A DNA stretch of 64,000 nucleotides from Phallusia mammillata (Eukaryota). Numbering within the stretch: position 1 is the stretch's first letter; each line of letters begins with the position of its first letter. The stretch covers positions 18,228,001-18,292,000 of the forward strand of contig OZ281498.1 in the NCBI GenBank assembly GCA_965637545.1, written 5' to 3'. Positions 70 through 45,765 of the stretch are shown one piece after another. The notes under the pieces are model-generated. The model did no database searches. It had not been told where the DNA came from and saw only the letters and a list, made by a program, of their open reading frames with translations. The position numbers and the translations under genes are program-made.

Positions 70-3000
70 CAATCGAACACATTCTTCCGATAAATCCACT
101 CAAACATTCGCAGTGGAAGTCACGCTTTCCAACATTCGAACAACTGCCACCATTGAGACATGGGTTGGGTTGACAACGATCCACTGAAATTTAACATTTT
201 TAGATACGAGTGATTAGGATTGTGCCTATTTAAATATAGGATACATAAACTTAACGTTCTCTTTTGACCAGATATTTATGTTATAATTTTACTTGTGTCA
301 AATTAAGTTATGTAATACAGTTAAGTTGACAAAAATGATAAAGATTTGGTACAATATGTTTTTACCTCTATTGCACTTGGATCCAACATATCCAGGAAGA
401 CAAAAACATTTTAATCCGCGCAAAGTGTTCAGGCAAGTTGCACCGTTGCCACAAAAATTGTTTTTGAATGCAGTTTCATCTGTTACATCAAAACAAAGTT
501 TAAACGTAAACGGCTATTGGGTGACCAATAAACTACCTGGTATATAGTAACATATTTGTTGGACATCAGACACTAATTGTATTGATAACTGTTCAAAAAT
601 GTGGTGCACGGATTGAACGTATAATAATTGTGTAATTATTATGCATTATGTTTTTTGGACACAGGCCAAAACAGAGACCTAATATTCAAATTATGTTTGA
701 AACATAATTCCAAATTTGATTTAGCTCATAAAACGACAACCTGGTTCATGAATGACTGATTGTTATTTGCAATTTTTAAATCAACTCTTACCAAAATATG
801 CTTTCCAATGCATCTTGACGGTAGGCTGACCCCAACCGAAATGCAAATCCGTCCTCCTGACCATAGCTTTAAATCCAAATCGTTTGACAACTATATCGGT
901 CACCTCAAAACGGTCGGGCAGTGTTTTGTTTCCAATAGCAATAGCAGTAATTTTTTCAGCCAACCCGCGGTGGCAACTTTCATAAGGTACTTTAATCGCC
1001 AACCTGTTGCTGTAGCCATAGTGACGAGTCACATTGTAACTGCCAGTCAGAATATCTGCAAAAATGCTAATATGGAAAAATGTACCAATCTTTTGCCATT
1101 ACTTTCTACATGTAGCACACATTTTTTGTTATCAAACTGAATGTGAATAAGACATACGCAAAGAACAGTCTTCGCCACCATATCCTTCGCTGCAAGAACA
1201 GTTGAATCCAGTGTCTGTATCAAGGCAAACACCGTTGTTTTTACATGGCATTGTGGAACAGTTGCGAATCTCTGAATACAGTAATGAAAAAAGCTTTTCG
1301 AGTTATCGAAGTTTTGCGAATTTTATCTTATTGAACCCACTTTCTTCACAGAACTCGCCCTTGTACTGCGAGGTACAGTTGCATACAAACTTGTTTTTGT
1401 GTATTATTGAACACTGAGCTCCATTTTTGCATGGATTGTTTGGAAAACCATCAGGAAGAAGAGAGTCTGTAAACAAAATAATCATTGTTTATCCACGGAT
1501 TATGTCCAAGCATTATGTAAGAAAAATATTAGAGAAACACCACTATGAGGATAAAAATATACCATTTTTGAAAATACCTGGATCAACAATACATCTTTCT
1601 CTACATTCTATTTTATTTCGTAAAAACATTTTATAAAATATCTAATACTTTAGAAGACTAAAAGAGTTTTAAATAGAACAGCAGTTAAATGTTGGATTAC
1701 AAAATATTCCATTTGATCACATTACTTACCAAAATAAGCGGTAAATTGAAGAGATAGACGATAAAACGCTCGGCGCACTACGTCGTTTGACGTACGACGT
1801 ACAGTAACGTCAAATCCGTTTCTGTGCACTTGCCTGAGATAAGGCGTGTAATTAAACGGCGAATTTCCCAGACTGATTAATTTCACAGCTACAGCTGTCG
1901 GCCTGCGGTTGTAGCATTCGTCAAAAATGAATGAGGCGTATTGATACCAAACTGATATGTCAACTTCAATGTGTCGTATACCGCTAATAAAACCTTTAAA
2001 TAATAACTAAATGTAATTGAATAACCTTGATTAAACTTAACCTATAAAGCAACAAGTGAAATATACATATACATATATAACAGCAATTGAAAATGCAACC
2101 TGCCTATTAACCCAATGTTTGTAACTATTTGAAGTAACAAAGCACTAAGTTTATAGACATGCTATACGTAAATCAATGTGAAAACAGCGCTAGTTATTTA
2201 GTTTATTGATAAAGTTATTATTCTATTTTGCGTTGTTTTGCATGCTTGTATTACTGTTGTGACTGGTAGCTTAATTGTTTAGCCCAGGGGCGTGCAACTG
2301 TTTATCGCGGTGGGCCACAACTTACAGTTAAAATAATGCTGAGGGCGAGACAACTAAGCAACATATACATTTTTTTAACAGCTTATTTAATAGCAAGGGG
2401 CACACAATCAAGTAACTCTTTGAGTACTCTTTGATCAATGGGATATGTGCTAACCGTTTCGTAGAATAAATCTCAATATATTTACTGCACCTATAAATCT
2501 TTTTACTGAATCATTAAAGGCTGTTCTTTCATAATGCACACGATGATGCAACAACGGGAATATGTCGTCACAGTAGATAAATCCTTATCACGGTGTGACG
2601 TTGTACAAATTTAAAATTGCCAGTGATGGTGTACAAATAGCAACATTACATGCTCTAACAGTAAAAAGTATTCATAATTGATAGAGTAATTTGAATGCGC
2701 GGGCCACGAAAATAGGTGCCGCGGGCCGTATATTGCACGCCTCTGGTTTAGCCTTTTTTACACTAAATTTTTTTGTGCTAATTTGCGCAACGGCGGTAGT
2801 ATATTTATTCATTATGCCACTGTTCAGCGTTTCATTTTATCAATGCTGACGATGCCAGAAGCTGTTGTTGAATAGCTAGACCAGCGGTTCCCAACCTTTG
2901 TGGTGCCGTGACCCCTTAAAACAGTTCCCAAGTTGCAGTGACCCCAACGATAAAATTAGCAGGCTTTATTGAATTTGCTTCTAAATATCGCGAACTTTAT

Positions 3001-6000
3001 TTCTCACTATACTTTCTTTTCCTAATACTTGCTTTCGATGCATCATTGACAGCCTGAAATTTTACTCATTAAATTTCAGTTTAGTTGACTATTAAGTTAT
3101 AATTAGAGGATAGTGATATTATCGCGAGAATACAAAACAAGTTGGCAGGTGACTTGGTGATTATGATATGTAAATGCAGTATTATTACGTAATAGAAGGC
3201 AATAATCAGCATTTTGTGAAAACAATTAAGTCTTCAAAAAAGAAAGATCCACCCCAACTGTAGTTATTAGTTTTCATACGAGTTAACAAACCATGGCGAA
3301 AGGCATGTTGATAACTGTTCTTTCGGTTTTTATTTGCTAAATTAGTCCACGGCTTAAAATGAGTTGGAAGCCATGGCCTTAGGGAGGCGACCCCAGGCAA
3401 ATTGTCAGGCGACCCCACTTGGGGTCGCGACCCACAGGTTGGGAACCGCTGAGCTAGACATTAAACATGTCTTCTTTTTATGGTAGGATATATGAATAAA
3501 TCAATGATATAAATAAATCTCATTTACACTTGTGCAAAGTGTGCTAACAAACTTATTTGTTTTCAATATGGGAAAGTAATTTGCTACCTTTTATCGTCAT
3601 CTGTAAAAAAATGTTAAAATAAGATATAATGTTAAAATGTGCTACTGGACAAAATCAGCGTTGGTTTGATAACTCCAACTCACTGATTTCACAGTTGCTT
3701 CCACCAAACCTTTCGGCACAATCACAACGATGGCCATATTTTGTATTCACACAAGTTCCCCCATTTTTACATGAATGACTTTGGCAATATAACATCTCTG
3801 CAAGGGACAAAATATCATCAAATTACAGTTTTTGTGTTTCATTTTAAACTAAAAGGCACAAACCTGTTTCGCACAATTTTCCTGTATATCGACCAGTACA
3901 GTTGCAAGTTACATTGTCTAAAGAGTTTGTACATTGGCCGCCGTTAGCGCAGGGATTTGCATCAACAGTGGTTACAGCATCTACAACAGAATTAAACAAT
4001 GGCGAATGAAAAGTACTCCAGAAGCCCCTACAACCACTGTTTCAGACCCATCATCTATTTTCTCCACTTGTAACAAAATTTATTTTACTTTGCACAACAT
4101 TTTCTTCTACTTAGTATAAATATAATTTCAATAAGACTGTTTGCACTAAACTAAAAAATACATTTGCAAAACTTACCAAAATATGCTTTCCAATCAACAA
4201 CAATATCAATAAGGTGCCATTCGATTCCTTCGCGTCTGGTTAGAGACGCAGTGAAACCACCTCTACGTATTTCTTGTACTTGGACATCCACAAAATTCGC
4301 AATTTGACCACGTATCGATAAATCAATCCTTGAAGCGTTGATTCGTTTACACGAGTTATAAACGATGACCAAATTCCTGGCGTTGGAAATCCATTCACTG
4401 TTATTTTCGAGTACTTCTTGACCATTTACGTATCCTTAAAACAAGTTCTTTTTTGTATTATTGACCTGCGTTTGATGTTTTTGCAAGATTGTTTAAAACT
4501 CTTAAACGACAAAACTTACAAACTTTGCAGCATAATTCTACTATGTACACAGTACAGAGTATTAGGAGCTGGTGTATTTGTGTTAATTCATTAAACTTAC
4601 CAACTGTGCAGTTTTGACCTGCCCAACCTTTAGGGCACTCACATGCGTAATTTGTTTCTGTTTCAATGCATTTCCCACGAGAACATGGAGAAGGGTAGCA
4701 ATACTTAAGTTCTGTAAAGAAAAAGTGATAAATCTGCCCTTAAATCTGATAAATCTGTCGAATAAACAGATAGATTTTGTACTTCAGAATAACCCACGCA
4801 AGTTTTCAAAACTGAAGTTTCGGTGTTTAACCCCGAACTTTCACTAATTCTATTAACCTAATTTGAAAACTTATTATCAATCCTTTTACAGTTTACTTTG
4901 GTTTCCTATTTTTCACTTTACGTTTTTTTGATATATTGTTTATTTTATGTTTTTTAGCCATTTCTTTTTTGCGCGTGCTTTTTATCTAATAACACCTAAA
5001 ACTGTTCATGTTTATGCTGCTTATGCTACGCGTTTTCTTCGTTTTTTAACCACTTCGCACGTTTAACATGAGAATATTTTTCTTCAGACACCCTACTACG
5101 AGGACAAAAGAAAATTAGAAACAAAAGTGCTCACGTTTGTCACAGAATTCTCCGGTATAGCCCGGCTCGCAGCGACATTTTCTTCCAGCCGGGCTATTTT
5201 TGCAGCCGTAGTAGTTTACACATGGCATCTGCAGAAAATCGTAAGAATCTGTGGGAGTAAAAGACATGTGGTTGCGTCACTTTTTAAGTGCTTTGTGTTA
5301 CCGGTGGCTTCATACGTTGACAAAAAGATTTATTGACACAAACTTTTTAATGAACTTTAGGATCACGGTTATTATTGTAAGTTTTGCTTGAACAAAAAGT
5401 GCCGACATTTTTTGCACGAAAAAAGTTTATGTTGTCAATTTAAAAAACGCGGTAGTAAAAGCAAGAAAAAAAAGTAATGTTGCAAACAATGTTCCTTACC
5501 AAATATTGCCCTATAATGGAGATCTACTCCAAATTGACCCCATCCGAAGTTAACGCGATCAGATCTCCAAACATTAACCTGAAATCCCCATGGATATATG
5601 CCGAGGACTGACGAGTTAAAAGTGTCAGGCAAAGAGCTAGACCCTGTAACAGTGGTATCCACTCGTATAGCTGTTCCCGTGTAACATCGATCGTAGGAAA
5701 TGTTCTTCACCAAATTAAAGGGCGGCTCAAACACATAGTGTGGTGGGAGTCTATAACTTACGTGAATTTCAGGTCCTAATTAGAAAAAAAATAGTTAGCA
5801 ATGGTAAGTATATATGTTTTGTTTGGATTTTTTTCGTTTTTTAGAACTAAATTTATGCTAAAACATTTTTGAAATGTAACTAAAAAAGGAACTTTGATGG
5901 TTGTTTTGCATTTTAGAATACTACAAGTTTGTCAGCATTGTGTTGGTAATTGCTTTATGAATTTTACTTCTTTAGTGAACAAAAAGAAAGTTATTTTGAG

Positions 6001-8449
6001 ACAAAGTGAGTGATGCAGGTAATTATAAGGAGAAATCTAAGTTTTGAACAAGTGTTTTATGAGACTTGTAATACTGACCACGTTCGCAAAATGTGCCTGT
6101 GAACCGCCCAGTGCATTGGCAATAAAAGTTTTTCTGAGTGTCGAAACACGTGCCGTTGTTTTGGCACGGGTTGGACGCACAAGCAGGAACGTCTGTAAAA
6201 AATAGAACGTCAGCAAAAGATAACAACTTTAAAAGGAATTCGCTAATTCTAAATCGCAAGAATACATGTAAAACGTGTACGTGATTTTTTGGCAATACGC
6301 ATGTAATTACTGAGTTACTGAAATAGACTTCAAAAGAAAACAAATATATAAAGCACTAAACTGCTAAACCGTACTTGTGTTTTGTTAAGTGTATTTAAAT
6401 TTTGTAATAACTTCTTTGTACGGCAATATTATAGAAGCTTATATTACACCCTTCCTTAGCTTTACACAAGTATTACACTTTCGTAAAAACTCTTTACGGA
6501 CAAAAACTTTTTGTTAAAACTTTTTTTAATTTTTGTGGTTTAAGTCAAGTATCTTACAATACTATTTCAGGAAGGTCTTATCTTACAAACTTCACAAAGT
6601 CTTCCAGTATATCTTTCTGAACAGGCACAAACAAATCCATCCACTGTATTCGTGCACGTTCCATCGTTCCAGCATGGATTGATATAAAAATAACGGGGTT
6701 CTGAGATAAGAAATCAGTTAAAATGAGATCTAATAAGGTGCAATTAGTCAATTTGAACCTACCAAAATACGCTTTCCATTTCAGAGATATACTGGATACA
6801 TTCTTGTTGTCATTTTGTTTACGAGGCAACTGCAGTTTGGCAACAAATCCCCACAAAAATATCTGAGTTACTTGAATATCCTCAAGACCGGATATATTGT
6901 TGCTTACTGAAACATCAACCTTACCAGCTTTTATTGCTTTGCAGTTGCTATATAATATTGTAACATTTTCATTTGTAGATGTGATCCTGTGAACATGTGT
7001 TTCCGTAATATATTCTGAAAGTAGATTCTAGTTTTGTTATATGTAATATATTGTTGGTGATCAACTTTCAAGAAAAGCGTGTTTTTTGTGTCCAAAGAGA
7101 ATTTTTGTAATCCATGAAGCTACTTACTAAACGTGCAGACGTTTCCAGCAAACCCGATAGGACACAAACATTTGTAGCCATTGGTCAGTTCAACACACGT
7201 ACCACCATTGTCGCAGGGATTTACCAGGCAATGTACAAGCCCTAAAAATATATGAACGGTGAACAAACCTACTGATTGTGGTTCGAAAACTTGCAAAGTT
7301 GCAAAATATGGGCTTGTGAGGAAATGTTTCCCTTTCAATTGCTTCCTGTCAACAAAGTGCACCAGTTGATTGAATTACTTGCTTCACAAACCAAAGTCCA
7401 AAAGCCAATGTGTGCAGCAACAATCTGTCTTAATAGTTGTTTGCTATGAACATCTTACGCGTTTCACAAAGTTTTCCTCCATATTGTGATGGACAGTTAC
7501 ATCTAATTCCACTTTTTTGATTAGTACATGACGCTTCTTGATAGCAGGGATTGGACTTGAAGTTTGATGAGTCTATACAAAAAAACAGCAACATGACATT
7601 AGAATGTCAACAACAATTAATGCGCGGAACACTATACACGGACTTGAAAAGTAATTTGATCATAAACATTACTGCCAGAGTATAAATGCGCTGCAGTAGG
7701 TTATTTAATTTGTGTTGTACATATTAACCACTTACATTTTAACTTGAAACCTGCAAGCATCAAACAAACTGTGTAATTCGTAGATAATTGTTCTAATCTA
7801 AACATTTGTATTGTTTCCTAATATTTATTCCATACCAAAGAATGCTTTCCATGAAAGAATGACCCCGTTTTGCCACCAGTCGCGTCTGGTTTGATCCGTT
7901 CTCTGCACAAGAACTTGGAACCCCCATTCGTAAATGTTAAGAATTGTGGCATTAAACGTATCAGGCCACCGCTTATCTCCTTGGATCTCAGCCTTAATTT
8001 GATTTGCGGTTCCATTAAAGCATTGTTCGTACACAACATCGACAATTTTCCTCTCAGAGTATCTGTTTGATCCCACCTGCTTTTCATCTCCCACCCAAGT
8101 TTCACCTAAAACAACAACATAACACTCTTATTATTTGTAGAATAAAGAAATAGTCAATCAGACAATGCAAAGGTATATTCAAAAACCCTAGTTTTTACGG
8201 CGTACACATTTGTGCAGATTGGCCTATAACGGCCTCTAATATTATGCCAGATAGCAAAATGGGGATTAAATGCTTAAAAGTTATGTAAAACGCACAGTAC
8301 GTACTATAGCCCTTCTAGTTTATTACTGTCCGCAACACACTTTACATAATTGATAAAGATTAGAAACAAGATTTTAACTTACCTATCTCGCCCTTGGAAG
8401 AAACAACTGCAGCAAACACAACAAACAATAACAAACTAACTTTAAACAT
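70..8449 (-). CDS. Gene A: secreted protein, signal peptide + 6x[D (H-type-lectin-like) domain + 5-Cys EGF + 6-Cys EGF]; 3' end runs off the window
   Basis: Exons read by hand with AG/GT sites, internal exons phase 1-1, in transcription order: SP 8383-8449 ([22 protein letters not shown]); D 7836-8105; EGF 7459-7572, 7128-7241; D 6763-7014; EGF 6587-6700, 6079-6192; D 5500-5775; EGF 5135-5248, 4601-4711; D 4177-4434; EGF 3864-3980, 3684-3797; D 1730-1993 (absent from the ORF track); EGF 1341-1466, 1158-1271; D 792-1055; EGF 366-479, 70-183. The short stop-codon exon seen in paralogs B-D is expected left of position 1. Confidence 0.88.
2285..2745. mobile_element. hAT-type MITE
   Basis: TIR CAGGGGCGTGCAA...TTGCACGCCTCTG; perfect 8-bp TSD GTTTAGCC at 2277-2284 and 2746-2753. 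Confidence 0.85.
2882..3451. mobile_element. hAT-type MITE
   Basis: TIR CAGCGGTTCCCAACCT...AGGTTGGGAACCGCTG; perfect 8-bp TSD AGCTAGAC at 2874-2881 and 3452-3459. Confidence 0.88.
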
Positions 8450-9409
8450 GTTGATTCCTCTGGCTTCTCTCAACACTGCTACAACAGCGATTTGAATTCA
8501 AGCCAGCAGCCTTTTTTCGTCATGCCCGAGAGCTCGCAAAGGTATGTTATCAAACTCAACCCCTGTTGGTAGTCTTATGGATGTGTTGCGTTCAGCATTG
8601 GATATTTTTGGATATTTGTGTTAATGACAAATCCATAGCAGAAGATATCATTTTCATGTCCAAACTATGTGCTTTCAAATCATGCGCAAAACACACACAT
8701 ACGTTTTTGAAAGCAAATTGATCAAAAAACATAACTTGCATCAGACAAGGTAATATAGTCCAAGCATTGGGTTTAACAGACTTGCTCACAGACAAACCCC
8801 CCCAAAAAAGTCAAATTACACACAGAAAAAAAAGTCAAATTACACACAGAACTGGACAGGCCGCTTGAATAGGATTTACTATAAATCAGGTGTTTACCTA
8901 CTACCACATTTTTTATGCCACCTATAAAAAAACGAAATCTTTAATCCTGTTGAATTAAGGGAGGTCTGCATCAGTAACAATACAGAAAAAAAATCTTGTT
9001 TTGAAATTGTTGGTTCTCTCATAAATATTTGCATAATATTTAAGATTTTTATTAACAAAATCGGAAATAGCATAACTGCAAGTCTCTCGATTTGTCAACG
9101 TCGGTTCTGTGATAAAAGTAATAATCTAACCGTGCATGTTAAAACCTTTGTTTCACCAAGAATATATTTTACCAACAACTCAATCGTCAATCTAACTGCT
9201 TTACCATTTGGACCTGTCTTTTTAACTAATTTGCAATGGATTAAAAAAATGTTACAATACAAGTCAGTAGGTATAAACAAGATACAATAATTTTCACATT
9301 ATTTAAGCGTAACAAAACAACTTCGTAGTAAAACAAATGTTACACGAAGAGTCAATTACGAAATTGGAAAGAAATACTTTCAATTGTTCTCTGATATAAG
9401 AATCGCTGA

Positions 9410-12400
9410 TTAAGCCAATGTGGAATTGCTGTTGGCTATTTTGACGATGTCTGAAAGTAAAAACAAAGTAATTATTGAAACAAATTTATTTTAATTTCAC
9501 GTTCAACTCAGGAAATATTAAGCCATAATACTAACAAAAGATAAAAAAAGTGTTACAGGATTATCAAAAACAAAAATAATGAGTATTTAAGTGGCTACCT
9601 ATTGAGCACTTCCGTCCGACAAAACCGCTCAAACATTTGCACTGAAAACGACGCTTGGTCAAATTCGTACAGTTTCCACCATTAAGACATGGATTGGGTT
9701 GACATAGGTCCACTAAAAATAAGAATGATTGTTAGCAACCATAAACCTGGCTTCGTAGACTTGCTAGATAACATAAACCTTTTCAAATCACGACTTGTTG
9801 CTGGAAAAACTAGCGAGCTTATTTACCATTTCTGCACTTAGATCCGATGTATCCAATATGACATAAACATTTTAATCCAGTCTCAGTGTTTTGACAAGTT
9901 CCACCATTGAAACAGAACTGCTCGTTTAAACCACTTTTATCTGTTAAAACCAATGACAAAAAGAATCAGAATATTTAATTGTAAGTTTAGCAGAAAATAC
10001 TTGAGTTTCATGAAAATTGTAATGGTTTAAAAGACTGTCTAAATTCGCATGTATGATTGAAATGTCTTTGTATAGACAACACATCCTTACCGAAATATGC
10101 TTTCCAATACACCTTTACTGTTGGTTGCTCCCAACCGAAGCGTCTATCTGTTCTTCTCACAGCAGCTTTGAATCCATATCTTTTGATTGTTATGTCAGTA
10201 ACCTCAAAACGATCACGTAGTGCTTTGTCGCCCAAGGCAAAAGCGGTAACTTTTTTCGCTGGTTTCATGTGGCACTTTTTATAAACTACTTTAATCGACT
10301 TTCTGTTGTTGCGACCATAATGTCGACCAACAGCATGTGTTCCGGTGACAATTCCTGCCGAAATAAAAATCAAATTTAAGATGGTGTAATATTTTCTACA
10401 TAAAGCTTCAAAGATTCCACGTAGTCAATAAAACTCGTAACACATTGCCTGAAATATAACCCGTTTTTTTGATGCAAATGTTTTTAACTAGACAAAATCA
10501 CTGTTTTGTGCTTATAGTGTTTGTGCGTTTGGTAATTTTGCCACGTTAATCTTAATAATGCAGCGATAAAATACAGTCAAATTGATAAAAGCTTTGAATT
10601 TTGCCACTAGTTAAAGACGGTCAATTTGTTTCCCCACTACATCTGTATCTATTCATTCAAGACAAAGAAAAATGTACTTGCAAACAAAACATACTTAAAG
10701 AACAGTCTTTGCCTCCGTAGCTTGCGGTGCAAAAACAATTGAATCCAGCGTTTGTTGCCATACACAAACCGCCATTCTTACATGGTTGTGTAGAGCAGTT
10801 GCGTATCTCTGAAACATGTTACAATGGACCCATGTAATTCGTTAGTTTCTAAATGCAGATTTTGTTTTACCTTCTTGACATAATTTGCCTTTGTATTTTG
10901 CAGTACAATTGCATGTAAAATCATGCATACTAATTATCGAACATTGAGCTCCATTCTGGCATGGGTTTGTTGCAAAGTCGCTTGAATCTAAGATGAACAA
11001 TTCTTAGCTTGAAATCTCTGCGATTAAAGCGTTTCTGTAGTGGTTAAAAAACTACGCAATGTTTCGATTAATGTATCTTGAGTATACTATAGTTGTATCA
11101 ATCTTTATCGATGATATCATTGTCTACATTTGGTGATCTGCCATATCTAGGTAGGGTACACAAGTTAATTTTTTTTCGATATAACATTTATATTTTGTCC
11201 AGCGTTTCCTTCTTTTCAAGTTTGTAGAGCTTTTCTGGCAAATGTAATGTTATTCCGACGTTTCGACGTCCTATACAGGTTGTCGTCATCAGGGTAAAGC
11301 TCTACAAATTTAATATTATGCCTGGCAGCAATAGCTTATATGTTTCCTTCTTTTATCTCCAAAACAATATTTTACCAAATCGAAGGGTCAGAGGGTTAGA
11401 TACTGTTCAATCGATTGATTCTAAGTTTGCCAAATAGAAATTGAAAATATGTTAGATTACTACCAAGGGCTAAATGAAAAAAAAAAGGTTTTTATAGGCC
11501 CCTCGAGATGAGTTTACACAAGATACCAATGAGGCTATAAATCAATTGAAATGGACACTTATGCGCAAATATTCTGATTTCTGATTTAAAGATGAAAACT
11601 ATCGATACCGATTAAACATTAATTCTGTAACATACAAATTAGAGCCCATCTATACATGACAACAGTGTTCGAAAGCGGCTCACAAACTGTCGCAAACCAG
11701 CTCTTGTTGACTTTACGGCCATTGCTTACAGATATGAATAATTGTTACAAAGTTATCTCATTACCGAAATGGGCCTTAAATCGAAGCGACAGACGTTCAT
11801 AATATCTGTCTGCTGCGCCATACGAACGATGGATAGCGACTTGAAATCCGTTCCTTTTCACCCAGTAAATTCGAGGTGTGTAGTCAAAAGGGTGATTTTC
11901 CAGATTGAACAATTCCAAAGCCACACTCCTTGGAACTTGGTTATAGCATTCGTCGAACACAAATGTCACATATTGAGTCCAGCTTTTTCTTTCAATCTCA
12001 AAATGGCGGATTCCGCTGACCACACCTCAGAGTGGAAATAATTACATTTTGCACATAAAATCTGTGTCTGCTGATACGTAGATCTTTGCATTAGAAAAAC
12101 TGGCCCCAGGAGTAAATATAGACGATGTATTTTACTTTAGACACATTAGTATTATTACCCTATATGTATGTTATTTTCGTCACATGTTAATTCTGTACAC
12201 TTTCTTCAGAAAATTGGTCAAAAACATTCAAATTAGCAAAATTATCAAACCAAATTTGTGACCAAAAAATAACTTGAATACAAAAAACACACAAAAAAGC
12301 AGCTTATATGCATATTTTTTGTAAACGAGTGCACGTATTGCATTTTGTGCAGTAAATTTTACTTCATATACTTCTTATTTTTAAAGTGATTACTTACTTA

Positions 12401-15400
12401 CAGCGAAAAAGACATCGACTTACTCATTTCACAGTTTCGTCCACCGAATCCATCAACACAATAACACTTGTAGTAATGTTCAGTATTCACGCACGTTCCC
12501 CCGTTTTGACAAGGCTCAGCAAAGCAATACGACAATACTACAGCAGCAATAAGCAGAATGTTTGCTTACATGTTAAACCGGGGTTACAGGTCGGCCAGGC
12601 CTTAAATTTGTCGAAATCAAACGAATATAAGGCCCAAAGGTGAAAATTAAAGCACAATCGGAACCCTAGTGTAAATACGTGCCCGAGTAAAGCGCCGCTA
12701 AAGTATAATTATAGCCTGAACCCCAACACCATGAAAATTGAGTTGGCCGAGGACGGACTTACAACTCTTAGTTGGACTATGCATTTTTTCTCAAACAAAA
12801 CGGAACCAACCGGTTTCGCAAAATCTTCCTGTAAATCGCTTCATACACGTGCAAGAAATTTTGTTCAAGTTGTTTGTGCACTGACCGTGGTCTCCACAAG
12901 AAGTAAAATCAACGGACGGAGTATCTACATAAAAAGACAATGCAAAACTACTTATTTTAAAACGCTTCAGCTTCTCAAACTAAACTTTATCTATGTCAAC
13001 CTGCCAGCTAGATTGTATTGATAGACATAAATCTTTTTTATGTATGTAAAGGCAATATCGTTTATGTAACGTTTGAAAGTTTTGCTTAAATGTTTAACAG
13101 TTTTCCAGTAAAATAGAAATTAATGAGTCGATTTATGACGTACGGTAAATTTAATGCTTACCGAAATATGCTTTCCATTCCACAACAACATCAATCAGAT
13201 GCCACTGAATAGCATCGCCACTGTGTCTGGTTAGAGACGCAATGAAACCACCAGTACGAATGTCTTGCAGCTGGACATCAACCAATTTTGCAACTTGACC
13301 ACGTATGGACAAATCGACTCTAGAAGCATTTTGACTTTTGCATGAGTCGTATTTGATTGTCAAATTCCTTGTGTTGAAAATCCATTTATTGTTACTGACA
13401 ATTTTTTGACCTGTTACGTAACCTATAAGCATAGGAATTGGTAAAAAAGTATATATCATGTTGAGTAGAGTTTGCCAAACATGTTAAATTAAAACGCGAA
13501 TCTTAAAAACTGTTTGGCGAATTTACTACAATAAAAGACAGTGTAAGAAACAGGTTACAAATTTTTGCCCGTTAAAGCAGTGCTACAGTTCAAATAAATG
13601 TTTGTGTTTATTGCTAAACTTACTAATAGTGCAGTTTTGACCTGTTAAACCTTCTGGACATTGACACTGGTAATTGGTTTCATTCTCGGTACAGTTACCA
13701 CGATAGCAGGGCGAAGGATAACAAAATTGAAGTCCTACAAAAAAGTTAAAAAACGACTGAAAATATACTTTTTTTAATTTCACGTTAGCAGATTGAGCAT
13801 AAAAAAGCAGAGTTAATTAAAAACTATTTCTGTTGTTTGAAGTTTTCTGATTTTTTAATTCTCAATTATAAGGCTATGTTTTAGTTTTATTTACATGTTC
13901 GCCGCTCCCGTTAACTGAATGTATTGTGTTTTACTGCTTTTCTTTTCTGATGTTTTAATTGAAAGACGAATTAAAAATCAGTCCCAAACCAAATCAGAAA
14001 GTAAATGCAACTACATACTTTTAGGACTTACGCTTGTCACAAAATTCTCCGCTATACCCAGGTATGCAGTTACATATTCTTCCAGCTGGACTATTTTTGC
14101 AGCTATAATCATGAAAACATGGAGAATGCCGAAAGTCGTAAGAATCTACAGGTAAAAAATATGTAAACTACAGTGGTATACACAACCAAAATATTCTTTT
14201 AAAAGTTTATGAATATATATTTGCGATTAATGCTAAAACATTTTTAAGGCAATTCGGACTTTTAAGCGAGCCTGAAATTAGGGCTTTAAACCGGCTCGAA
14301 ACCAAAAATACAAGTTTGAAACCCGGCCCGAACCCTTTTTGTGTGTTTTTTTGTTTGAAAAACAGACCTCGAATCCAGCCAGAAATGTCAGTCTAAATCA
14401 AGCCTATTTGTATCTCAAACCCTAAAGCGACCAATTTCTTCACCAGAAACGTCCTTACAACTCGAATGCAAACCTGTCTGTGGTAGAGGCTAATTTCAAA
14501 TTTCAAAAAGTTTTAATTTTAAATACATTTTTGCTAAAACACGTTTTCGACTTTACCGAATATTGCTTGATAACGAAGATTTACGCTGAACTGACTCCAT
14601 CCAAAGTCATCACGATCAGTTCTCCATATTTTGACCTGAAACCCCCATTCGTATATACCGAGCACCGATGAGTTGAACGCGTCTGGAAAAGTGCTTGACC
14701 CCCTAACGCTCGTTTCCACTCGTATTGCCGTTCCAGTGTGGCATTTATCATAGGAAACGTTTCGCACTACACTAAACGGGGGCTCAAACACGTAGTGCGG
14801 TGGAATCACAACAGAACCACGAAGTTCAGGCTCTGTAGAAAACAAAACTGTGAAAATAAGTTTTGTTTGTTTCCATTTATCCACACGAAGTCAAGTAACA
14901 AAATAGTTCATAAGCTGCAGACAGTGCACAAGGTCGAAACAGTGTGCACTGTCTGCAGCTTATCATTTATTGGCTCTATATGCTTTTACTTTTTAAAATA
15001 GTTCATGTTTCTGATGCATCGCTATAAAATATGTTTGTTTAGGTCAGGGGTAACCAACAAGCGGCTCGCGAGCCGCGTGCGGCTCTGTGCCTGGTTTTAT
15101 GCGGCTCTTACGTCGTTGTCGAAGTTTTGGGGCACCATGTATACTTTGGTTAGTTTGTGGCTATGACAATTTTGCTTTTGAACAAACTTACTATTGGTAT
15201 GGCCACAAACCTTGAAACTGCAACCTCATCAGACATGAATCTTACCGCAAGGTACTGATAGAAAGAGAAACAAAAGATAGTTTAATTTACATGTTTTTGT
15301 TTGTGGGATTCGTTAAAATGAGATGTTACAGATATAGTGAAACTGTAAATGTTAAAAGCTATAGCTAAAATGCTGAATTGTCAGTTGTGGAACCTCTAGC

Positions 15401-18400
15401 CGCGTGCTAGTAAACCCTGGTTACTCAACAGTTGGTATGTTTTATGTTCTTATTTGATTTGTGTTTAACTTGTGTCAAAGTGTATTAAATCCGTAACTGG
15501 ACTTATTACAAGTAATTTGGGAGTAATCTAATGTAGAATATGACCGATCTATGTAGATTTAATTTGAAACCTGTGTGTACTGTTAAAACTGCTTATTGTG
15601 TGATGGTCGCTATGACGTCATAATGTGTGCGTTTGGCTTATGTATGTTATTTGTGGTTACAGAAAAACCGTTGCCGTTGCTATTGACGTTGTCTTGGTTT
15701 ATTCTTCAGCGTTGCCTATTATTGTCAAAAAAGAACATTCGTTGCAAATGCAAGAGTGGGTCGTCTTGGTTTATTCTTCAGCGTTGCCTATTATTGTCAG
15801 AAAAGAACATTCGTTGCAAATGCAAGAGTGGGTTGTCTTGGAGGACAGGCTGTAGGACGGGCGCGTTTTACAAAAAGGGTTACCTAGTGTGACGAACGGC
15901 GCAGGGCCAGGCTGCGCACCTAGCGGTCGTTACAATGAGAGTTTTTGTGTGTTAGGCAGTGCAAACCACTCATTGTTGAAAATGACTAGCCTGTGGTCTG
16001 TACAAGTCAAATTGTGTCATTATTATGTTTGGGTGCGACATTTAGAATAAATCCGATTAAGAACAAGTGTGTGAGAAAGGGCCGATCCCAAGCAATGAAC
16101 ACGTGTGCACATGTGTAATGTGGCTCTTTGTGGTAATACAGTAACAAATGTGGCTCTTAGGCTTTGCCTGGCTGGCCACCCCTGTTTACGTAGTTTCCAT
16201 ATTGTTTTCATTTTTTAAGTACATTAAAGATGCATATTGTTAAAGTTGTAATACACTAAATTATATTTTTTCAAATCATATTTAAGACCCATCAACAAAA
16301 CCACGGGGGTATGTTTGAAAACAAAGCATTGTTTAAATAACAAATACTTTTTCTGCAAGAACTTTCATTTGAAGTTTTTGTAACGTGAAATATGAACGTA
16401 TTTTTGACCTGCTTTTGCTCAAAGTTTCCGGAGACATTAAATGTAATAATTATACTGACCAATTTCACAACGGTATCCACTAAAGTGTCCGGGACACTTG
16501 CAATAAAACGATAATTGGGTGTCGACGCACGTGCCGTTGTTTTTACACGGATCGGATGCACAGAAACGAACATCTACAAAGAAAAAAATACTTTTTAGCA
16601 TGTTTATTTCTTAGTAGTCATGACAAGCGCAAAATACCAATAACAGAAAACCTTTTCAGTTAAAACAGTTTGTTTGATATCACAGATTTTAATTTAAAAA
16701 CATGACCATTGTACTAATCGAATAAGTGCGAATTGTCTGCAGGCTACTTATCATACATTTTTGTTGTGTTCGTTTTTTAAACTGGTAGTATAACCTACAA
16801 ACCGAAATTGTTCCCAGTCTGTATGTAACGGACAGTAACGCTCCCCTACAACAAAAACCTTTCCCGGTTAGTGTCGCAGTGGTATCTGAGTTAGTTGTGA
16901 GTGTATTAGGAACTTGGCCAAACGGTCTGGCGCGCCTGACCCATATGCAGACATAAAAAAACCTTGATCGGGATTCGTCCCCGGGAGAGTCCTGGGTTCG
17001 AACCCCGTGGAAAAAAAAATTTAAAAAAAAAAAAAAAAGTTGTGTTATACTTTTATGTAAAGTGCAAGTAAGATTGTTTGGACTATTTTGTAGTTATGAC
17101 GTTCTTTTTTCTATTTGGTTTAGGTGTTAAAAATCGTTTTCAATAACTCTTCATTTCTATAAAGTGCATGTGAAACTGACAGCTCTTATTCTGCCAGTCA
17201 AGAGACTGAAAGGTAGAATTGGCACAATGCTTGAGTTCTACGCTGCACATTAGGTTAAAAACTACGTTTCAGTCGTAACTTACGAAAGTCACAAAGCCTT
17301 CCAGTATATCTTTCTGAACAAGTGCAAACAAATCCATCCATCGTATTCGTGCACACGCCATGGTTCCAGCATGGATTGGTGTCAAAATAAATGGGTTCTT
17401 ATGAGAAAACATTATCAGGTCAAATGTCTCAGGCATATTACCTCAGTTTGAACGTACCGAAGTATGCTTTCCACTCAATCATTGCATTAGATACATTTAT
17501 TTTGGTTTTCAATTCGCTTGATATTTTGGCAACAAATCCCCACAGATGAATTTGACTCACTTGAACTTCCTCAAAGTCTGATGTGTTGTGACGCATGAAA
17601 ACCTTCACTTTTGTAGCTTTTGTTGCTTTGCAGATGCCATATACTATTGTGATATTTTCCCTATCAGGTTCAAACTTTAAATCGGTTTCTCCAGTAATGT
17701 ATCCTGAACGTAAAAAAAGCGTTTTTGGGATACAAGGTGTGCATAGAAATCATGGAACTTTTGCACTTAAAAACAAGCATTAGTACTTTAAGGTCAGTGA
17801 ATTTTCACATTTTTCTTGTTAAAAAAAGTAGTTGCTTTTATGTCAAATCAAAGTTAACAAATAGTGCTTTACCTTTGTATTTGATAAGTTGTTTTTAAAT
17901 TGTACAGAACACAGTTTACTTACTAAACAAACAGTGGTCCCCGCCATACGAAGTTGGGCACAGGCATTTGTAGCCATTTAACAAATCAACACACGTTCCA
18001 TTATTGTTGCATGGGTTTACAAGGCAATGAACAGGCTCTGCAATCAATCAATGCAATTTCAACACTTAAATGAAGAATGATCAATTTCAAAAGTATTTTG
18101 AAATCAGTGTGCTTGTAATGGTCAACAGGGTCAACAGTCCCAGTGGTTAGGAGGAAATCACAAACGGCTTACAAAGTTTTGTATTGTTTCCTGTTACCAC
18201 ATTCTTAAACATGTTGCCCAGTACTAAAGATTTTGTACGATTTCACTTGCATGTTGTTGCAAACATAATACATATTGAATGAAGTGTACTTGTTGTGGAA
18301 CTGTTAAAAAATATATGGTAACTAACAAAACGATATATAGCGATAAAATGGTTAAGTTTGTTACATTACCCAAAAAATGTTCCATTTAATATACATACAC

Positions 18401-18598
18401 TTACAATTCTCTAGGTTCACCACAAATACAGAAAATACTCAAACAATATTTTTGAGGAAAACAGGAAAACGCATGATACCATGCGGTATTTACATGCATC
18501 CATGTTTAAAAACAGCACTTTAAAAAAAACTCACCATTTATGCAAATTCCCAGTTCAGCAAAGGCAAGAAATAATAACAATTTGTAGATAAACGACAT
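9410..18598 (-). CDS. Gene B: secreted protein, signal peptide + one 6-Cys EGF + 5x[D + EGF + EGF] + short tail (~888 aa predicted)
   Basis: Exons: SP 18535-18598 (MSFIYKLLLFLAFAELGICING); EGF 17924-18037; D 17458-17703; EGF 17284-17397, 16460-16573; D 14557-14832; EGF 14032-14145, 13624-13734; D 13162-13422; EGF 12811-12924, 12424-12537; D 11765-12025; EGF 10871-10987, 10695-10808; D 10091-10354; EGF 9827-9940, 9599-9712; terminal 9410-9450 (DIVKIANSNSTLA*). Exon lengths sum to 2667 nt, in frame. Confidence 0.88.
11217..11341 (-). mobile_element. Short hammerhead-motif retroelement (family 1)
   Basis: 13-bp direct repeat GTTTCCTTCTTTT at 11204-11216 and 11342-11354. Minus-strand core CTGATGA-C-GAC-AA-CCT-GTAT-AGG-AC-GTC-GAAA-CGTC at 11257-11292. 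Terminal inverted segments TTTGTAGAGCTT...AAGCTCTACAAA. Confidence 0.7.
14912..14994. mobile_element. Collapsed palindromic copy of hammerhead-motif element (family 2)
   Basis: AAGCTGCAGACAGTGCACA-AGGTC-GAAACAGTGTGCACTGTCTGCAGCTT; 12-bp TSD AAAATAGTTCAT at 14900-14911 and 14995-15006. The paralogous intron of gene C (~27450-27465) has the site once, with no insert. Confidence 0.72.
15045..16184. mobile_element. hAT-type non-autonomous element with an internal 72-bp tandem duplication
   Basis: Ends CAGGGGTAACCAAC...GCTGGCCACCCCTG; imperfect TSD (GTTTAGGT versus GTTTACGT, overlapping the terminal G); 72-bp unit at 15691-15762 and 15763-15834. Confidence 0.7.
16908..17038 (+). mobile_element. 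tRNA-derived SINE-like element or tRNA pseudogene with an A-rich tail
   Basis: A-box-like TGGCCAAACGG, stem CCTGA/TCGGG around an intron-sized loop, B-box GGTTCGAACCC, then poly-A. No acceptor stem. A diverged second copy lies on the minus strand at ~34185-34275. Confidence 0.55.
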
Positions 18599-18957
18599 GT
18601 TTTACCTTTCCTGCAAACTAGTCGCACTGCATGCAGTCGAAAAACGCGTTGAAATCTTTCTCTCGATCAAACGTTTTTCTTTGATGCATATCTGCCTTGA
18701 TCACTTCACTTAACATTATGTTTCAGTGCTTTCCGAAAGTTTCCGAATTATGATATGACCGCTTTCGAAGTGGCTGTTAAAGTTTCGTACAATACAGTTT
18801 CAATAACAAAAACATAAATGGTATACACTCACGGAAGTTGTGATGGTGTCGTAAATGCAAATTTAAGCGATGTTATGGGAATGCATTGTTGTTTCTTTAC
18901 AGTTTATCGCTCAAACTGAAAAATATATTGTGTTGTGTACTTGCGTTTATTGTTCAG

Positions 18958-19208
18958 ACACAGATGGCAAGGATTGCAGAAATCCATTGACAACTACCAG
19001 TACAAATTTACAAACATCGGCTGAAGCCCAGCGTACAGCGAAAACCACCGAGATTTTATCTGCAACGACTATGAGTAGTAATTTTACAATCACAAATACA
19101 AACTTAACGACCAGTCGAAATCATCAGACATCGACTGAAACGCCATATCCAACAGAATCACCTTCAACATCAACAACTGCAACACACGGCAACGCGACTT
19201 TGAACACA
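18958..19208 (+). CDS. Isolated Ser/Thr-rich (mucin-like) candidate exon between genes B and C
   Basis: The acceptor tttattgttcAG at 18957 and donor GTAAGT at 19209 bracket an open frame DTDGKDCRNPLTTTSTNLQTS...PTESPSTSTTATHGNATLNT. I could not identify flanking exons with confidence. Confidence 0.45.
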
Positions 19209-19889
19209 GTAAGTCAAAAAAGACAGCTCTATTGAACAAAGCTTCTGTAAGCAAAAACGATGCTTTACTTGCAACATCTTAATTATTGGTTAAAAATTAC
19301 CGTTTTTTTTATTTGCTCTGACGTCTCGTGAACACGCCCCGGTTGCAGCTTGGAACCTCACACGAGGGGGGATTGAAACACGATTCCTAAAGGTTTCCAA
19401 CAAGCATTCCACACAGATAGAGTGTTTTGTAGATCTTATATTCAAACACTTTCAATGAAGAGGACGGTGGAAGGCGTTAGAAACGACAGAAGACGGTTTC
19501 TACAAAGACATGGCATTAGCACTGCGCTTTAAATGTAGAAATGTAACTTTTAGCTCACCAACTGTTATGGGAACCGGAAGGAAACATATAACATGGGCAA
19601 TCTCAGAAATCACTGGCGCACACCTAAATAAACAATAAAACATGAGACCACCATATGCCAGTACGACGTCATACACAATGCTTACCAAGCTATGTAGAGC
19701 AACAGTGTTGAAAAGTCACGCTTCAGGTGAGTATCGTACAAGAACGCTGCGTAAACAATTACAACTTTACCAACTTGAATGAACCCTACTACACGTATAG
19801 TACAACCATTAAAAAGCGAAATGACATTTTAATTCATTGCAGTTAAGTTCGCATTCGTTATAGTAATTCACATTTTGGAGTCATTAAAC

Positions 19890-19912
19890 ATATATATATA
19901 TATATATATATA
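19890..19912. repeat. (TA)n microsatellite
   Basis: Direct reading of an AT dinucleotide run. Confidence 0.85.
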
Positions 19913-20598
19913 CAAAGTGACTCACCAATAATCGTCAACACGACAATAAACGGCTTTCTAGTACAACCGACGCAGCACCACGCTCCACGGAAGTCAGCAA
20001 CGAAAAGAACTAAACCACGTTGCGTTATCACACAAAACTAGCAGTCGATTATTGCGTCACGCAACGCAATAGATTACAACACAAGTTTTACTGATGAAAT
20101 GCGGGAATCAATAGAATTTGGCGATTACTGGCAAACAGGATGTAACATTTGTACTGTTATCTGGAAGTATCCACACCTATAATAGTGCATTTAACGCCTT
20201 TGTTTTACTACATTTGATTCGTGGAAATAAGTCATCACAGAAATTTATGATTTTGACTTACTTTCTTTAAGGTCATATTTTTCTTCCGCAACTACATCAA
20301 ACACAAGTTTACAAATTGACCAGATTCGAGAAGCAAAATTGTTGATACATGCTAGAAGCATTGAATGACACTCGCTCGTTTACGACACATTATGAGGTAA
20401 GCGAATGTCATCGATTTTCAAGGAAGGCTCGCAATCAAACATTGATACAAAAAAAAGGAAAACCTGAACTTACTAACAAATCATAGCGACAGGAATAAAA
20501 AAAGAGATTGTGTTGAATCCAATTAATAATGTGGGTACAACTATTGGAAGAAATAACAAACAACAAGTTGATAATGTAATCTATGCTTTGGACTTACT

Positions 20599-20827
20599 TG
20601 TAATAGCGGACGCATGACAAGAAGGAAGTATTGCAGACTATTTACAAAATATACACATGGAGCGGCTTCTCTCACTACCGTTATCGTTTGGTTTCATACT
20701 ACAGCGAATCGGACAGATTGCCTTCTTTCTTTGACTCTCGTCTTATGCGGCGTATTTGCACATTGTGTTGTTCTATTACAATGTACCTCGAATAAACACC
20801 TCGCAACATTGGTGACCCCGACGTGAT
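20599..20827 (+). mobile_element. LTR-retrotransposon remnant: LTR 3' end plus tRNA-Trp primer-binding site
   Basis: AATAAA at 20791-20796, LTR-like end ...GCAACA at 20808, then TGGTGACCCCGACGTGAT at 20810-20827. From recall, these 18 nt are complementary to the 3' end of eukaryotic tRNA-Trp(CCA). The left boundary is a guess (TGTAAT at 20599). No gag/pol follows. Confidence 0.65.
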
Positions 20828-23132: not shown

Positions 23133-23301
23133 ATAGCTGCAGACAGTGCACACTGTTTCGACCCATAAGGTCTCATCAATGCAGCTGGTGACGAGAGATC
23201 ATGCATATTGGCTAGTGTAGCCATCCTACGGCACTCCAGTTTGTTGGGAGTAACAAGTGCACTGACCGCAGCTTATTATTCACTTACTGGATGCTTTACA
23301 T
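23133..23301 (-). mobile_element. Short hammerhead-motif retroelement (family 2)
   Basis: 11-bp TSD TGTTATGAAAG at 23122-23132 and 23302-23312; contains a three-stem hammerhead fold at 23135-23186 and an inverted partial tail. Confidence 0.72.
23135..23186 (-). ncRNA. Type I hammerhead ribozyme motif (U3 variant)
   Basis: Minus strand: AGCUGCA-UUGAUGA-GACC-UUAUG-GGUC-GAA-ACAGU-GUGC-ACU-GUC-UGCAGCU. Stem I 7 bp, stem II 4 bp, stem III 5 bp, GUC cleavage triplet. The only core deviation is C3->U. Confidence 0.65.
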
Positions 23302-24198
23302 TGTTATGAAAGGGTTACTGCAGAGTTTTAAATCTACACGATGATTGTTTTAATAATAATATGCAGATATGAAGCTAAGCAGCATCCTCATATATTGCTC
23401 TAAGCATGCGTACCGATCTTGCGAATATTGATCGATTTGTATACATTTTAAATCAAGATACTTGTAAACAAAGAAAACAAAACTTTGCCGAATAGGACGG
23501 AAAATATAAAATTATATATGTGCAAACACGTTTTTACAGCAGACACAGCCGAGGAGACAAGGTAGCACCCAATACGCCACACCAGTAAGAGCCTTTGAAT
23601 ATCAAACTTGAAAAATAAATTGCTGATTTTTTATTGTATAAATTTGATGTAATTTAGGGCCCATCTAGATGTAGTGTTGGAAAAGAGCCCCTAAATTATT
23701 TCACAATTTTCCCGCTCAAAGAGTCGGTTTGCATATATGACTTGGTACAAATGTCTTTTACCGAAAAGAGCCGTAAAACGGAGTGACAGGCGATCATAGT
23801 ATCTGTCGGCTGCGACATACGAACGATGGACAGTGACTTGAAAACCGTTCTTTTGCACCCAGAAAGTTCGAGCCGTGTAGTCATCAGGGAAATTTCCAAG
23901 ACTGACCAATTCCACTGCAATTGTTCTTGGAACTTTGTTATAGCATTCGTCGAATAGCAATGTAATATCTTGGTGCCATCTCTTTCTGTCAATCTCAACG
24001 TGGCGGATTCCGGTCACCGCACCTCAAAACGAAAAGTAAACTATGCACAAAATGTTTGCTATTGCGTTAGTCTTTTGAGAAAAAAACTGTCTTTAAGAGT
24101 AAGTAGTTACGGCGTGTTTTACTATAAACGCATTTATTTTATTACCATATACTTCTGCTATTTCGGTCACGTGGTAATTTTGTACATTTCCTCTAGGG

Positions 24199-45722: not shown

Positions 45723-45765
<43 letters not shown>

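What the first reader, a model, noticed from the sequence alone, without database searches (positions are those of the whole stretch)
7836..8105. The ~90-aa D domain: single-exon module resembling the H-type lectin fold, but strung in tandem
Seen: a conserved pattern V.Y..C..G.A..I...V.G.....DTF.ATIL.IYEWGF.V.V.RTD....W.Q..V.L.W.A.FG, with a usually conserved N-x-S/T sequon (FNAT/FNSS/FNHT). Established: H-type lectin domains (discoidin C-terminal domain, snail HPA) have an F...F...P.V motif, a central GF strand and a terminal W.A strand, and bind GalNAc at trimer interfaces. Inference: the D variant FDECYNQVPRSVALEL...RNGFQV...LRFKAHFG matches that spacing by eye. Tandem D domains in one chain could build pseudo-oligomeric binding sites in cis.
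Basis: partly seen in the sequence, partly recalled or inferred. Interest (0 to 1): 0.85.

Follow-up and report, generated by a model that had tools for sequence, protein, structure and literature searches.

The report
Divergent H-type lectin domains between EGFs
The 270-base exon is one of 38 copies of a roughly 90-residue module that modelling and profile searches place in the H-type lectin fold family, strung between EGF domains in three secreted proteins of what is probably a sea squirt; this is a new arrangement of a known sugar-binding fold, and sugar binding itself is untested.

Summary
Window 7836-8105 (-) is an exact phase 1-1 exon of 270 nt. A profile finds 38 such D exons in the window and nothing else significant except one remnant.

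The H-type lectin reading is supported at two levels:
- Fold: the AlphaFold2 model (pLDDT 93) best matches phage tailspike C-termini, the R-pyocin fibre foot, discoidin I, Helix pomatia agglutinin (HPA) and the coral lectin SLL-2 (Z 7.8-10.4).
- Sequence: the D profile aligns to segments of Pfam H_lectin-positive proteins at hhalign E 4e-15.

No single D reaches Pfam's threshold (best 14.9 against 24 bits). The closest full-length relative, from the ascidian Phallusia, is annotated "Notch".

Three details are corrected:
- The repeat unit is D, then a 5-Cys EGF, then a 6-Cys EGF.
- The sequon is kept in only 10 of 38 copies.
- The final G of "FG" comes from reading through the splice donor; the real residue here is Asp.

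Three genes are involved. In two of them a mapped signal-peptide exon splices in frame onto a D; the third has the same signal peptide, but its donor was not mapped.

Sugar binding, oligomeric state and the proposed cis pseudo-oligomers remain untested.

Verdict: a new variant of a known kind.

The parts
7836..8105 (-). The D exon of the finding (type 'a'): 270 nt, phase 1-1, encoding a six-strand beta-sandwich.
   Evidence: Sequence and splice sites. HMM score 125 bits. AF2 model pLDDT 93.3, pTM 0.82.
7459..7572 (-). The following EGF' exon: 114 nt, phase 1-1, 5 Cys (lacks EGF Cys1). Its first two bases complete the junction codon GAC.
7135..7239 (-). Core of the following canonical 6-Cys EGF exon.
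   Evidence: Pfam EGF E 5e-10.
41911..41974 (-). Exon 1 of the minus-strand gene: ATG, signal-peptide-like [20 protein letters not shown] donor in phase 1.
41122..41400 (-). First D of the minus-strand gene (type a); the exon starts at 41399 after an AG acceptor.
784..40164 (-). The other 22 D exons of the minus-strand gene (24 in all, counting 7836-8105 and 41122-41400). HMM envelopes start at 39871, 38784, 37431, 36395, 35391, 33789, 32542, 31511, 27128, 25747 (frameshifted), 23739, 22202, 17441, 14537, 13154, 11748, 10068, 6740, 5477, 4157, 1725 and 784. Each is followed by EGF' and EGF exons. The gene runs off the window start.
42952..43009 (+). Exon 1 of plus-strand gene A: ATG, signal peptide [23 protein letters not shown] donor in phase 1.
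43196..53254 (+). Plus-strand gene A body: 8 D exons (43196, 44926, 46221, 47280, 48779, 50171, 51444, 52641) with their EGF' and EGF exons. The last EGF' reads ...ETCKISN and then a stop.
55681..55735 (+). Approximate exon 1 of plus-strand gene B, with the same signal peptide as gene A. The donor was not determined.
56029..63854 (+). Plus-strand gene B body: 6 D exons (56029, 57980, 59541, 60640, 61835, 63392) that are paralogous, in the same order, to those of gene A. The gene runs off the window end.
53761..54015 (-). Remnant of a type-a D exon ([16 protein letters not shown]...), copied along with the promoter region in the A/B duplication.

Best explanation
D is a divergent member of the H-type lectin fold family. 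It is a six-strand beta-sandwich of about 90 residues, encoded by one symmetric phase 1-1 exon.

Shown:
- D occurs 38 times in the window, in three genes. For two of the genes a mapped signal-peptide exon splices in frame directly onto a D; the third (gene B) has the same signal peptide, but its donor was not mapped.
- Every D is followed by an EGF that lacks its first cysteine, and then usually by a normal EGF.
- D has one invariant cysteine.

Inferred:
- The invariant cysteine bonds to the unpaired cysteine of the next EGF, locking D onto an EGF stalk.
- With six full-length alternating strands, both chain ends and that cysteine sit at one end of the sandwich. Loops L1, L3 and L5 sit at the other end. 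These are the loops that form the sugar pocket in snail agglutinin and discoidin.
- The proteins are secreted, multivalent binders. Their roughly ten D types differ mainly in L1 and L5, and they most likely bind glycans.

Not supported: GalNAc specificity, and cis pseudo-trimers.
For: Copies and selection:
- 38 copies, with E down to 3e-42.
- dN/dS mostly 0.13-0.5 between paralogous D exons.
- Exact AG and GT sites in phase 1.

Fold:
- AF2 model pLDDT 93.3 with six strands.
- VIA-align Z scores: LKA1 gp49 C-terminus 10.4, R1 pyocin foot 9.6, discoidin I 8.8, HPA 8.8, SLL-2 7.8, each covering 83-89 of 91 residues.
- Foldseek: HPA TM 0.66.
- PMC6363177 groups exactly these structures as one lectin fold.
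- ESM Atlas: the top match by shape is an H_lectin cluster (TM 0.79), and the top match by features is also an H_lectin cluster.

Sequence:
- The D profile finds 66 proteins among 1.84 billion.
- At least ten of the 20 hits scanned carry Pfam H_lectin above threshold, and for several the best stretches coincide: P0015 272-340 against 273-340, and P0025 158-222 against 160-223.
- hhalign of the D alignment against those segments gives E 4e-15.
- The profile of those segments finds only HPA and HAA in the PDB.

Architecture:
- 38 D, 38 five-Cys EGF and 36 six-Cys EGF exons.
- A D plus EGF' model of the Phallusia relative has pLDDT 90.8 and pTM 0.80.
- L1 and L5 are the most variable regions; C29, G62 and F63 are invariant.

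Context:
- The named eukaryotic relatives are all tunicate. Several join a D-like domain to fibrinogen-type or C-type lectin domains.
Against: - No D reaches Pfam's H_lectin gathering score; the best is 14.9 bits against 24.
- The D profile alone finds nothing in the PDB.
- All solved H-type lectin folds act as homotrimers with sites at subunit interfaces. No oligomer could be tested here.
- About 16 of 38 D domains, by eye, have lost the PDTF and W.Q loop motifs.
- In the indirect alignment chain (D to the H_lectin segments to HPA), the D-family loop motifs fall opposite different HPA residues.
- CofB shows that this fold can bind a peptide and no sugar.
- The disulfide and the domain orientation are inferred. 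Model coordinates could not be inspected.
Confidence: 0.7

Rival explanations
1. D keeps the H-type lectin fold but has been repurposed for protein-protein binding or oligomerisation. It might hold chains together as trimers or dock a partner peptide, within an EGF-rich matrix, tunic or recognition protein.
For: - CofB's H-type lectin domain binds a peptide in the expected sugar site and shows no GalNAc binding.
- Ciona ficolin-like proteins have a D-like domain at their N-terminus. From general knowledge, this is where other ficolins carry an oligomerising segment.
- Many D types lack the conserved loop motifs.
Against: - The distal loops carry motifs (PDTF, R-x-D, GWGQ) shared with bacterial H_lectin proteins across a great evolutionary distance. 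This suggests a conserved small-ligand site.
- The relatives are paired with other lectin domains.
Confidence: 0.2
2. One reading: three D domains of one chain fold back on each other into a pseudo-trimer that rebuilds interface GalNAc sites in cis.
For: - Known sites lie at trimer interfaces.
- The nearest non-tunicate relatives (metagenome-derived, composition suggests bacteria) often have exactly three directly adjacent H_lectin domains: P0008, P0013, P0015 and P0019. This architecture could form such a unit.
Against: - Two EGF domains separate neighbouring D domains here.
- The D plus EGF' model looks like one rigid unit, with pTM 0.80.
- The complete gene A has 8 D domains.
- D types follow 4- and 5-unit super-repeats, not 3-unit ones.
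Confidence: 0.07
3. D is an inert spacer, or the array is a decaying repeat with no function.
For: - One D exon is frameshifted.
- One remnant copy exists.
- There is no expression evidence.
Against: - dN/dS is well below 1 across paralogues.
- 37 of 38 frames are intact, with correct splice sites.
- Signal peptide exons are intact.
- Relatives exist in other tunicates.
Confidence: 0.03

Closest known systems
Helix pomatia / Helix aspersa agglutinin (PDB 2CCV, 4Q56), the founding H-type lectins
   Same: - Six-strand sandwich of about 100 residues: Z 8.8, 83 residues aligned, rmsd 3.0.
- Shared sequence landmarks V-x-F/Y, P/A-x-V, a central GF strand and a terminal W-x-A strand.
   Different: - About 12% identity.
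- HPA is a free single-domain protein that forms trimers and binds GalNAc between subunits.
- D is embedded between EGF domains, has an invariant cysteine, and has different loop motifs.
Discoidin I/II C-terminal domain (PDB 2W94, 2VME)
   Same: - Same fold: Z 8.8, 84 residues aligned.
- The pocket aromatic residues mutated in DscA (W235, Y241) fall within the L5 span that PMC6363177 defines for discoidin I (T234-S242). D keeps a Trp in L5 in 63% of copies.
   Different: Discoidins are cytosolic trimers that pair the domain with a discoidin domain. The equivalence of pocket residues with D is unproven.
Phage tailspike and pyocin fibre 'foot' domains (LKA1 gp49, phi297 gp61, AP22 gp53/gp54, R1/R2 pyocin)
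   Same: The best structural matches: Z 7.1-10.4. They belong to the same fold group as the lectins.
   Different: They are C-terminal tips of trimeric fibres, with no EGF context. Identity is at or below 13%.
Metagenome-derived, apparently bacterial proteins with tandem Pfam H_lectin domains (P0008, P0013, P0019, P0025)
   Same: - The closest sequence relatives outside tunicates.
- They share the PDTF, GF, R-x-D, GWGQ and W-x-A motifs.
- hhalign E 4e-15.
   Different: - Their domains are directly adjacent, often three in a row.
- They have Phe where D has its invariant Cys.
- They have no EGF domains.
Phallusia mammillata 'Notch precursor' CAB3264411.1 (P0001)
   Same: - The same D, EGF', EGF unit, four times.
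- Up to 47% identity to D exons of the window.
   Different: - It comes from another ascidian, and the record is shorter.
- Its name is automatic. Pfam sees only EGF families in it, and no Notch-specific or H_lectin domain.
Ciona ficolin-like, fibrinogen-related and C-type lectin proteins with a D-like domain (XP_078485032.1, XP_078489867.1, XP_002129718.2)
   Same: - A D-like domain with the same invariant Cys context: profile E 1e-6 to 1e-4.
- Foldseek TM 0.77 to Ciona entries such as H2XLE3.
   Different: A single D-like domain is joined to another lectin domain, not to an EGF array.

Membership tests
H-type lectin (Pfam PF09458; HPA/discoidin fold) | Six-strand antiparallel beta-sandwich with the HPA/discoidin topology | tested here: met
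   - AF2 pLDDT 93.3 with six strands.
- Z 8.8 to HPA and to discoidin I, and 7.8 to SLL-2, over 83-84 of 91 residues.
- Foldseek TM 0.62-0.66 to HPA and HAA.
- Top ESM Atlas match by shape is an H_lectin cluster, TM 0.79.
H-type lectin (Pfam PF09458; HPA/discoidin fold) | Single sequence scores above Pfam's gathering threshold (24 bits) | tested here: not met
   - None of the 37 D domains scanned passes.
- Two give weak hits; the best is 14.9 bits, E 0.029.
- The Phallusia relative also has no H_lectin hit.
H-type lectin (Pfam PF09458; HPA/discoidin fold) | Profile-level homology to accepted family members | tested here: met
   - The D profile hits proteins that Pfam calls H_lectin (E 1e-20 to 2e-5); where checked (P0015, P0025) the best stretches coincide.
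- hhalign probability 98.4%, E 4e-15, over 87 columns.
- The profile of those segments finds only HPA and HAA in the PDB, at E 0.012-0.034.
H-type lectin (Pfam PF09458; HPA/discoidin fold) | Homotrimer with ligand sites at subunit interfaces | not testable with these tools
   The literature describes the trimers. No multimer modelling was available, and coordinates could not be inspected.
H-type lectin (Pfam PF09458; HPA/discoidin fold) | Conserved Gal/GalNAc pocket residues | tested here: inconclusive
   - The residue-level link to HPA is indirect. The H_lectin segment profile aligns to HPA at E 0.012, and D aligns to those segments.
- Along that chain, PDTF and RTD lie in the loops that carry the pocket in HPA, but opposite different residues.
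- Trp in L5 is kept in 63% of D domains.
H-type lectin (Pfam PF09458; HPA/discoidin fold) | Carbohydrate binding | not testable with these tools
   This needs recombinant protein and glycan arrays.
Notch (the name given to the closest full-length relative) | Notch-specific modules (LNR, ankyrin repeats, transmembrane segment) besides EGF repeats | tested here: not met
   - Pfam finds only EGF families in P0001.
- Gene A, from its signal peptide to its stop, shows only D and EGF exons by motif and profile search; it was not checked for other exons.

The most novel reading that the evidence does not exclude
The (D, EGF', EGF)n proteins are a tunicate-specific class of secreted recognition molecules. 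In this reading an H-type lectin fold is covalently locked to an EGF rod and has diversified into about ten loop types, arranged in recently duplicated 4- and 5-unit cassettes. Each chain would then display a combinatorial set of binding sites for microbial or self/non-self glycans. This would be a modular diversification strategy not described for this lectin family.
Probability: 0.15. Interest if true: 0.7.

Novelty: new variant of a known kind. Interest (0 to 1): 0.5.

Why it matters
- H-type lectins are a small, poorly characterised family, known mainly from snails, corals, slime moulds and bacteria.
- The architecture has no described counterpart: one domain per symmetric exon, each paired with a cysteine-deficient EGF.
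- It gives a concrete set of units to express for glycan-binding and oligomer tests.
- It flags related Ciona ficolin-like and C-type lectin proteins that carry the same hidden domain.

Tried and rejected
Searches that gave nothing useful:
- Pfam on the exon alone: no hit.
- The D profile against PDB sequences: no hit even at E 10.
- Foldseek against the PDB: no match at or below E 0.001; the best was 1.2e-3. The fold claim therefore rests on VIA-align Z scores and on the consistent identity of the hits.
- A word-based search with the D region of the Phallusia protein returned only that protein.
- Literature searches joining H-type lectin with ascidian, Ciona or tunicate found only incidental mentions.
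- Epi-1 was checked as a candidate known tunicate protein. It has trefoil domains, not D domains.
- A search for a paper listing the HPA pocket residues found nothing usable, so those residues are not quoted.

Technical failure:
- A first alignment for the multi-domain model (A3) was misaligned by MAFFT and discarded. A4 was used instead.

Readings rejected or left open:
- Rejected: that the proteins are Notch, and that the array is a dead repeat.
- Not pursued: bacterial origin by gene transfer. The domain is too short, and no classical animal H_lectin sequences were in hand for a fair tree.

Full report
**Observation**

The minus strand of 7836-8105 is open and encodes the quoted pattern. 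The reverse strand reads ttag|GTGAAACTTGG at the 5' end, with the AG acceptor at 8107-8106. The 3' end reads TTC G|GTATGG, with the GT donor at 7835-7834.

The next exon begins AC after its acceptor, so the junction codon is GAC, Asp.

An HMM built from 12 seed copies and run on the six-frame translation gives 38 hits, with E from 3e-42 to 5e-6. After those come one remnant (E 2e-5) and then only noise at E of 1 or more. The count of 38 is confirmed.

The sequon at the FNAT position is kept in only 10 of 38 copies. Across 37 aligned copies C29, G62 and F63 are invariant, and R69, A88 and F90 are nearly so.

**Gene context**

D exons never abut. A 5-Cys EGF exon that lacks the first EGF cysteine follows every D (38 of 38). 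A 6-Cys EGF exon follows in most units (36). The EGF' exon after the finding is 114 nt and is also phase 1-1.

The window holds three genes.
- A minus-strand gene starts with an ATG and signal-peptide-like exon at 41911-41974, which has a GTAAGT donor in phase 1. It splices to a D exon starting at 41399. It carries 24 D exons and runs off the window start.
- Plus-strand gene A starts at 42952-43009 with the signal peptide [17 protein letters not shown] and a phase 1 donor. It splices to the D at 43196, carries 8 D exons, and ends ...ETCKISN followed by a stop near 53254.
- Plus-strand gene B repeats the same signal peptide near 55681 and the same order of D types. It runs off the window end. 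Its donor was not mapped.

The D copies fall into about ten types. On the minus strand these are arranged in a 5-type cassette repeated about four times.

Paralogous D exons give dN/dS mostly between 0.13 and 0.5, with dS from 0.26 to above 2. They are constrained coding sequence.

**Fold**

With the 37-copy alignment, AlphaFold2 gives pLDDT 93.3 and pTM 0.82, with six strands. VIA-align against 48,161 PDB representatives gives these top matches, each covering 83-89 of 91 residues:
- LKA1 gp49 C-terminus, Z 10.4
- R1 pyocin fibre foot, Z 9.6
- phi297 tailspike C-terminus, Z 8.9
- discoidin I C-terminal domain, Z 8.8
- HPA, Z 8.8
- AP22 gp54, Z 8.5
- SLL-2, Z 7.8

Foldseek gives the same set at borderline E-values; HPA has E 3e-3 and TM 0.66.

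[quoted passage not shown] The tool notes that Z of 7-8 can arise by chance. The case here rests on every solved H-type lectin appearing together at the top and on near-complete coverage.

ESM Atlas matches by shape (H_lectin cluster, TM 0.79) and by language-model features (H_lectin cluster, 0.93) agree.

**Sequence homology**

Single D sequences do not reach Pfam's H_lectin threshold. The best is 14.9 bits against 24. The D profile alone finds nothing among PDB sequences.

The D profile, searched against 1.84 billion representatives, finds only 66 proteins at E of 0.001 or below. Of 20 hits scanned with Pfam, at least ten carry H_lectin above threshold. For several of them the best stretches coincide:
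- P0015: 272-340 by the D profile, 273-340 by Pfam.
- P0025: 158-222 by the D profile, 160-223 by Pfam.

These proteins share the motifs PDTF, GF, R-x-D, GWGQ and W-x-A with D. hhalign of the D alignment against 29 segments taken from these and other hits gives probability 98.4% and E 4e-15 over 87 columns. The profile of those segments finds only HPA and HAA in the PDB, at E 0.012-0.034.

D is therefore a divergent branch of the H_lectin superfamily that current Pfam thresholds miss.

**Relatives**

The named eukaryotic hits are all from tunicates:
- A Phallusia mammillata protein annotated "Notch precursor" has four D, EGF', EGF units and only EGF families by Pfam.
- Ciona intestinalis ficolin-like and fibrinogen-related proteins have a D-like domain at the N-terminus.
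- A Ciona C-type lectin protein carries a D-like domain.
- Several Clavelina proteins also match.

AlphaFold DB clusters give entries such as H2XLE3, which one search identifies as a Ciona fibrinogen-domain protein, as best matches (E 4e-6, TM 0.77). The best identity of any database protein to the window is about 60%. The window is probably from an ascidian whose proteins are not in these collections.

**Mechanism**

Shown: the architecture, the signal peptides, the one-to-one pairing of D with a cysteine-deficient EGF, and the fold.

Inferred:
- D's single cysteine (1) plus EGF' (5) makes an even count, which points to an inter-domain disulfide.
- A model of D plus EGF' from the Phallusia protein has pLDDT 90.8 and pTM 0.80. 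That is high for two domains and is consistent with a fixed arrangement. Coordinates could not be inspected.
- Six full-length alternating strands put the N-terminus, the C-terminus and the cysteine-bearing L2 at one end of the sandwich, and L1, L3 and L5 at the other end.
- L1 and L5 are the most variable regions within and between types. L3 and L5 carry the PDTF and W.Q motifs in roughly 22 of 38 copies.
- In discoidin, the pocket aromatic residues W235 and Y241 are needed for glycan binding (bioRxiv 10.64898/2026.06.18.733164). They fall within the L5 span defined for discoidin I in PMC6363177.

The most likely reading is a secreted, multivalent binder whose D tips face away from an EGF stalk and recognise glycans.

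CofB shows that the same fold can bind a peptide and no GalNAc (PMC6048534), so protein binding remains a serious rival.

Two EGF domains separate neighbouring D domains, gene A has 8 D domains, and the cassettes have 4 or 5 units. The nearest non-tunicate relatives, which come from metagenomes and look bacterial, do often have three directly adjacent domains, so the idea is not absurd for that branch.

**Novelty**

The literature held here has no description of H-type lectin domains in tunicates or of this architecture. A word-based search found no other annotated protein of 394-1255 residues with this D. This is a new variant of a known fold family, not a new fold.

Noticed in passing
window 25747-26037 (-): This type-h D exon has a 4-bp deletion relative to its paralogue at 13154-13429. 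The deletion shifts the frame just before the W-x-A strand. The correct ending (VVVEWKAYFGK) is readable in another frame. Because the exon is phase 1-1, skipping it would keep the gene in frame. An assembly error is also possible.
   Followed up: partly
window 41400-43196: The minus-strand gene and plus-strand gene A are head to head. Their start codons are about 1 kb apart (41974 and 42952), which suggests a shared bidirectional promoter region.
   Followed up: partly
window 53761-54015 (-) and 55681 onward (+): Genes A and B arose by a segmental duplication that also copied part of the first D exon of the minus-strand gene, now a remnant, along with the signal-peptide exon. dS between A and B copies of the D exons is about 0.26-0.43.
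   Followed up: partly
window 18036-21586 (-) and 27416-30243 (-): The 5-type cassette is irregular. Between the EGF at 21587 and the EGF at 17931 the expected type-a D and its EGF' are absent. Between 30244 and 27128 the type-a and type-f units are absent.
   Followed up: no
P0032, P0048, P0055 (Ciona intestinalis XP_078485032.1, XP_078489867.1, XP_078488981.1); P0036 (XP_002129718.2): Ciona proteins annotated as ficolin-like or fibrinogen-related carry an unannotated D-like (H-type lectin fold) domain at the N-terminus, before the fibrinogen domain. A C-type lectin protein carries one at its C-terminus. The domain could serve as a second lectin site or as a trimerising module.
   Followed up: partly
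window 41911-41974 and 41122-41400 (-): The signal-peptide exon of the minus-strand gene ends ...SKCEI with an extra cysteine, and the first D of that gene also has an extra cysteine (GETWAC...). This may be an additional pair.
   Followed up: no
window 23122-23312 and 34748-34950: Other first-stage notes report hammerhead-like repeats in introns of the minus-strand gene. They were not examined here.
   Followed up: no
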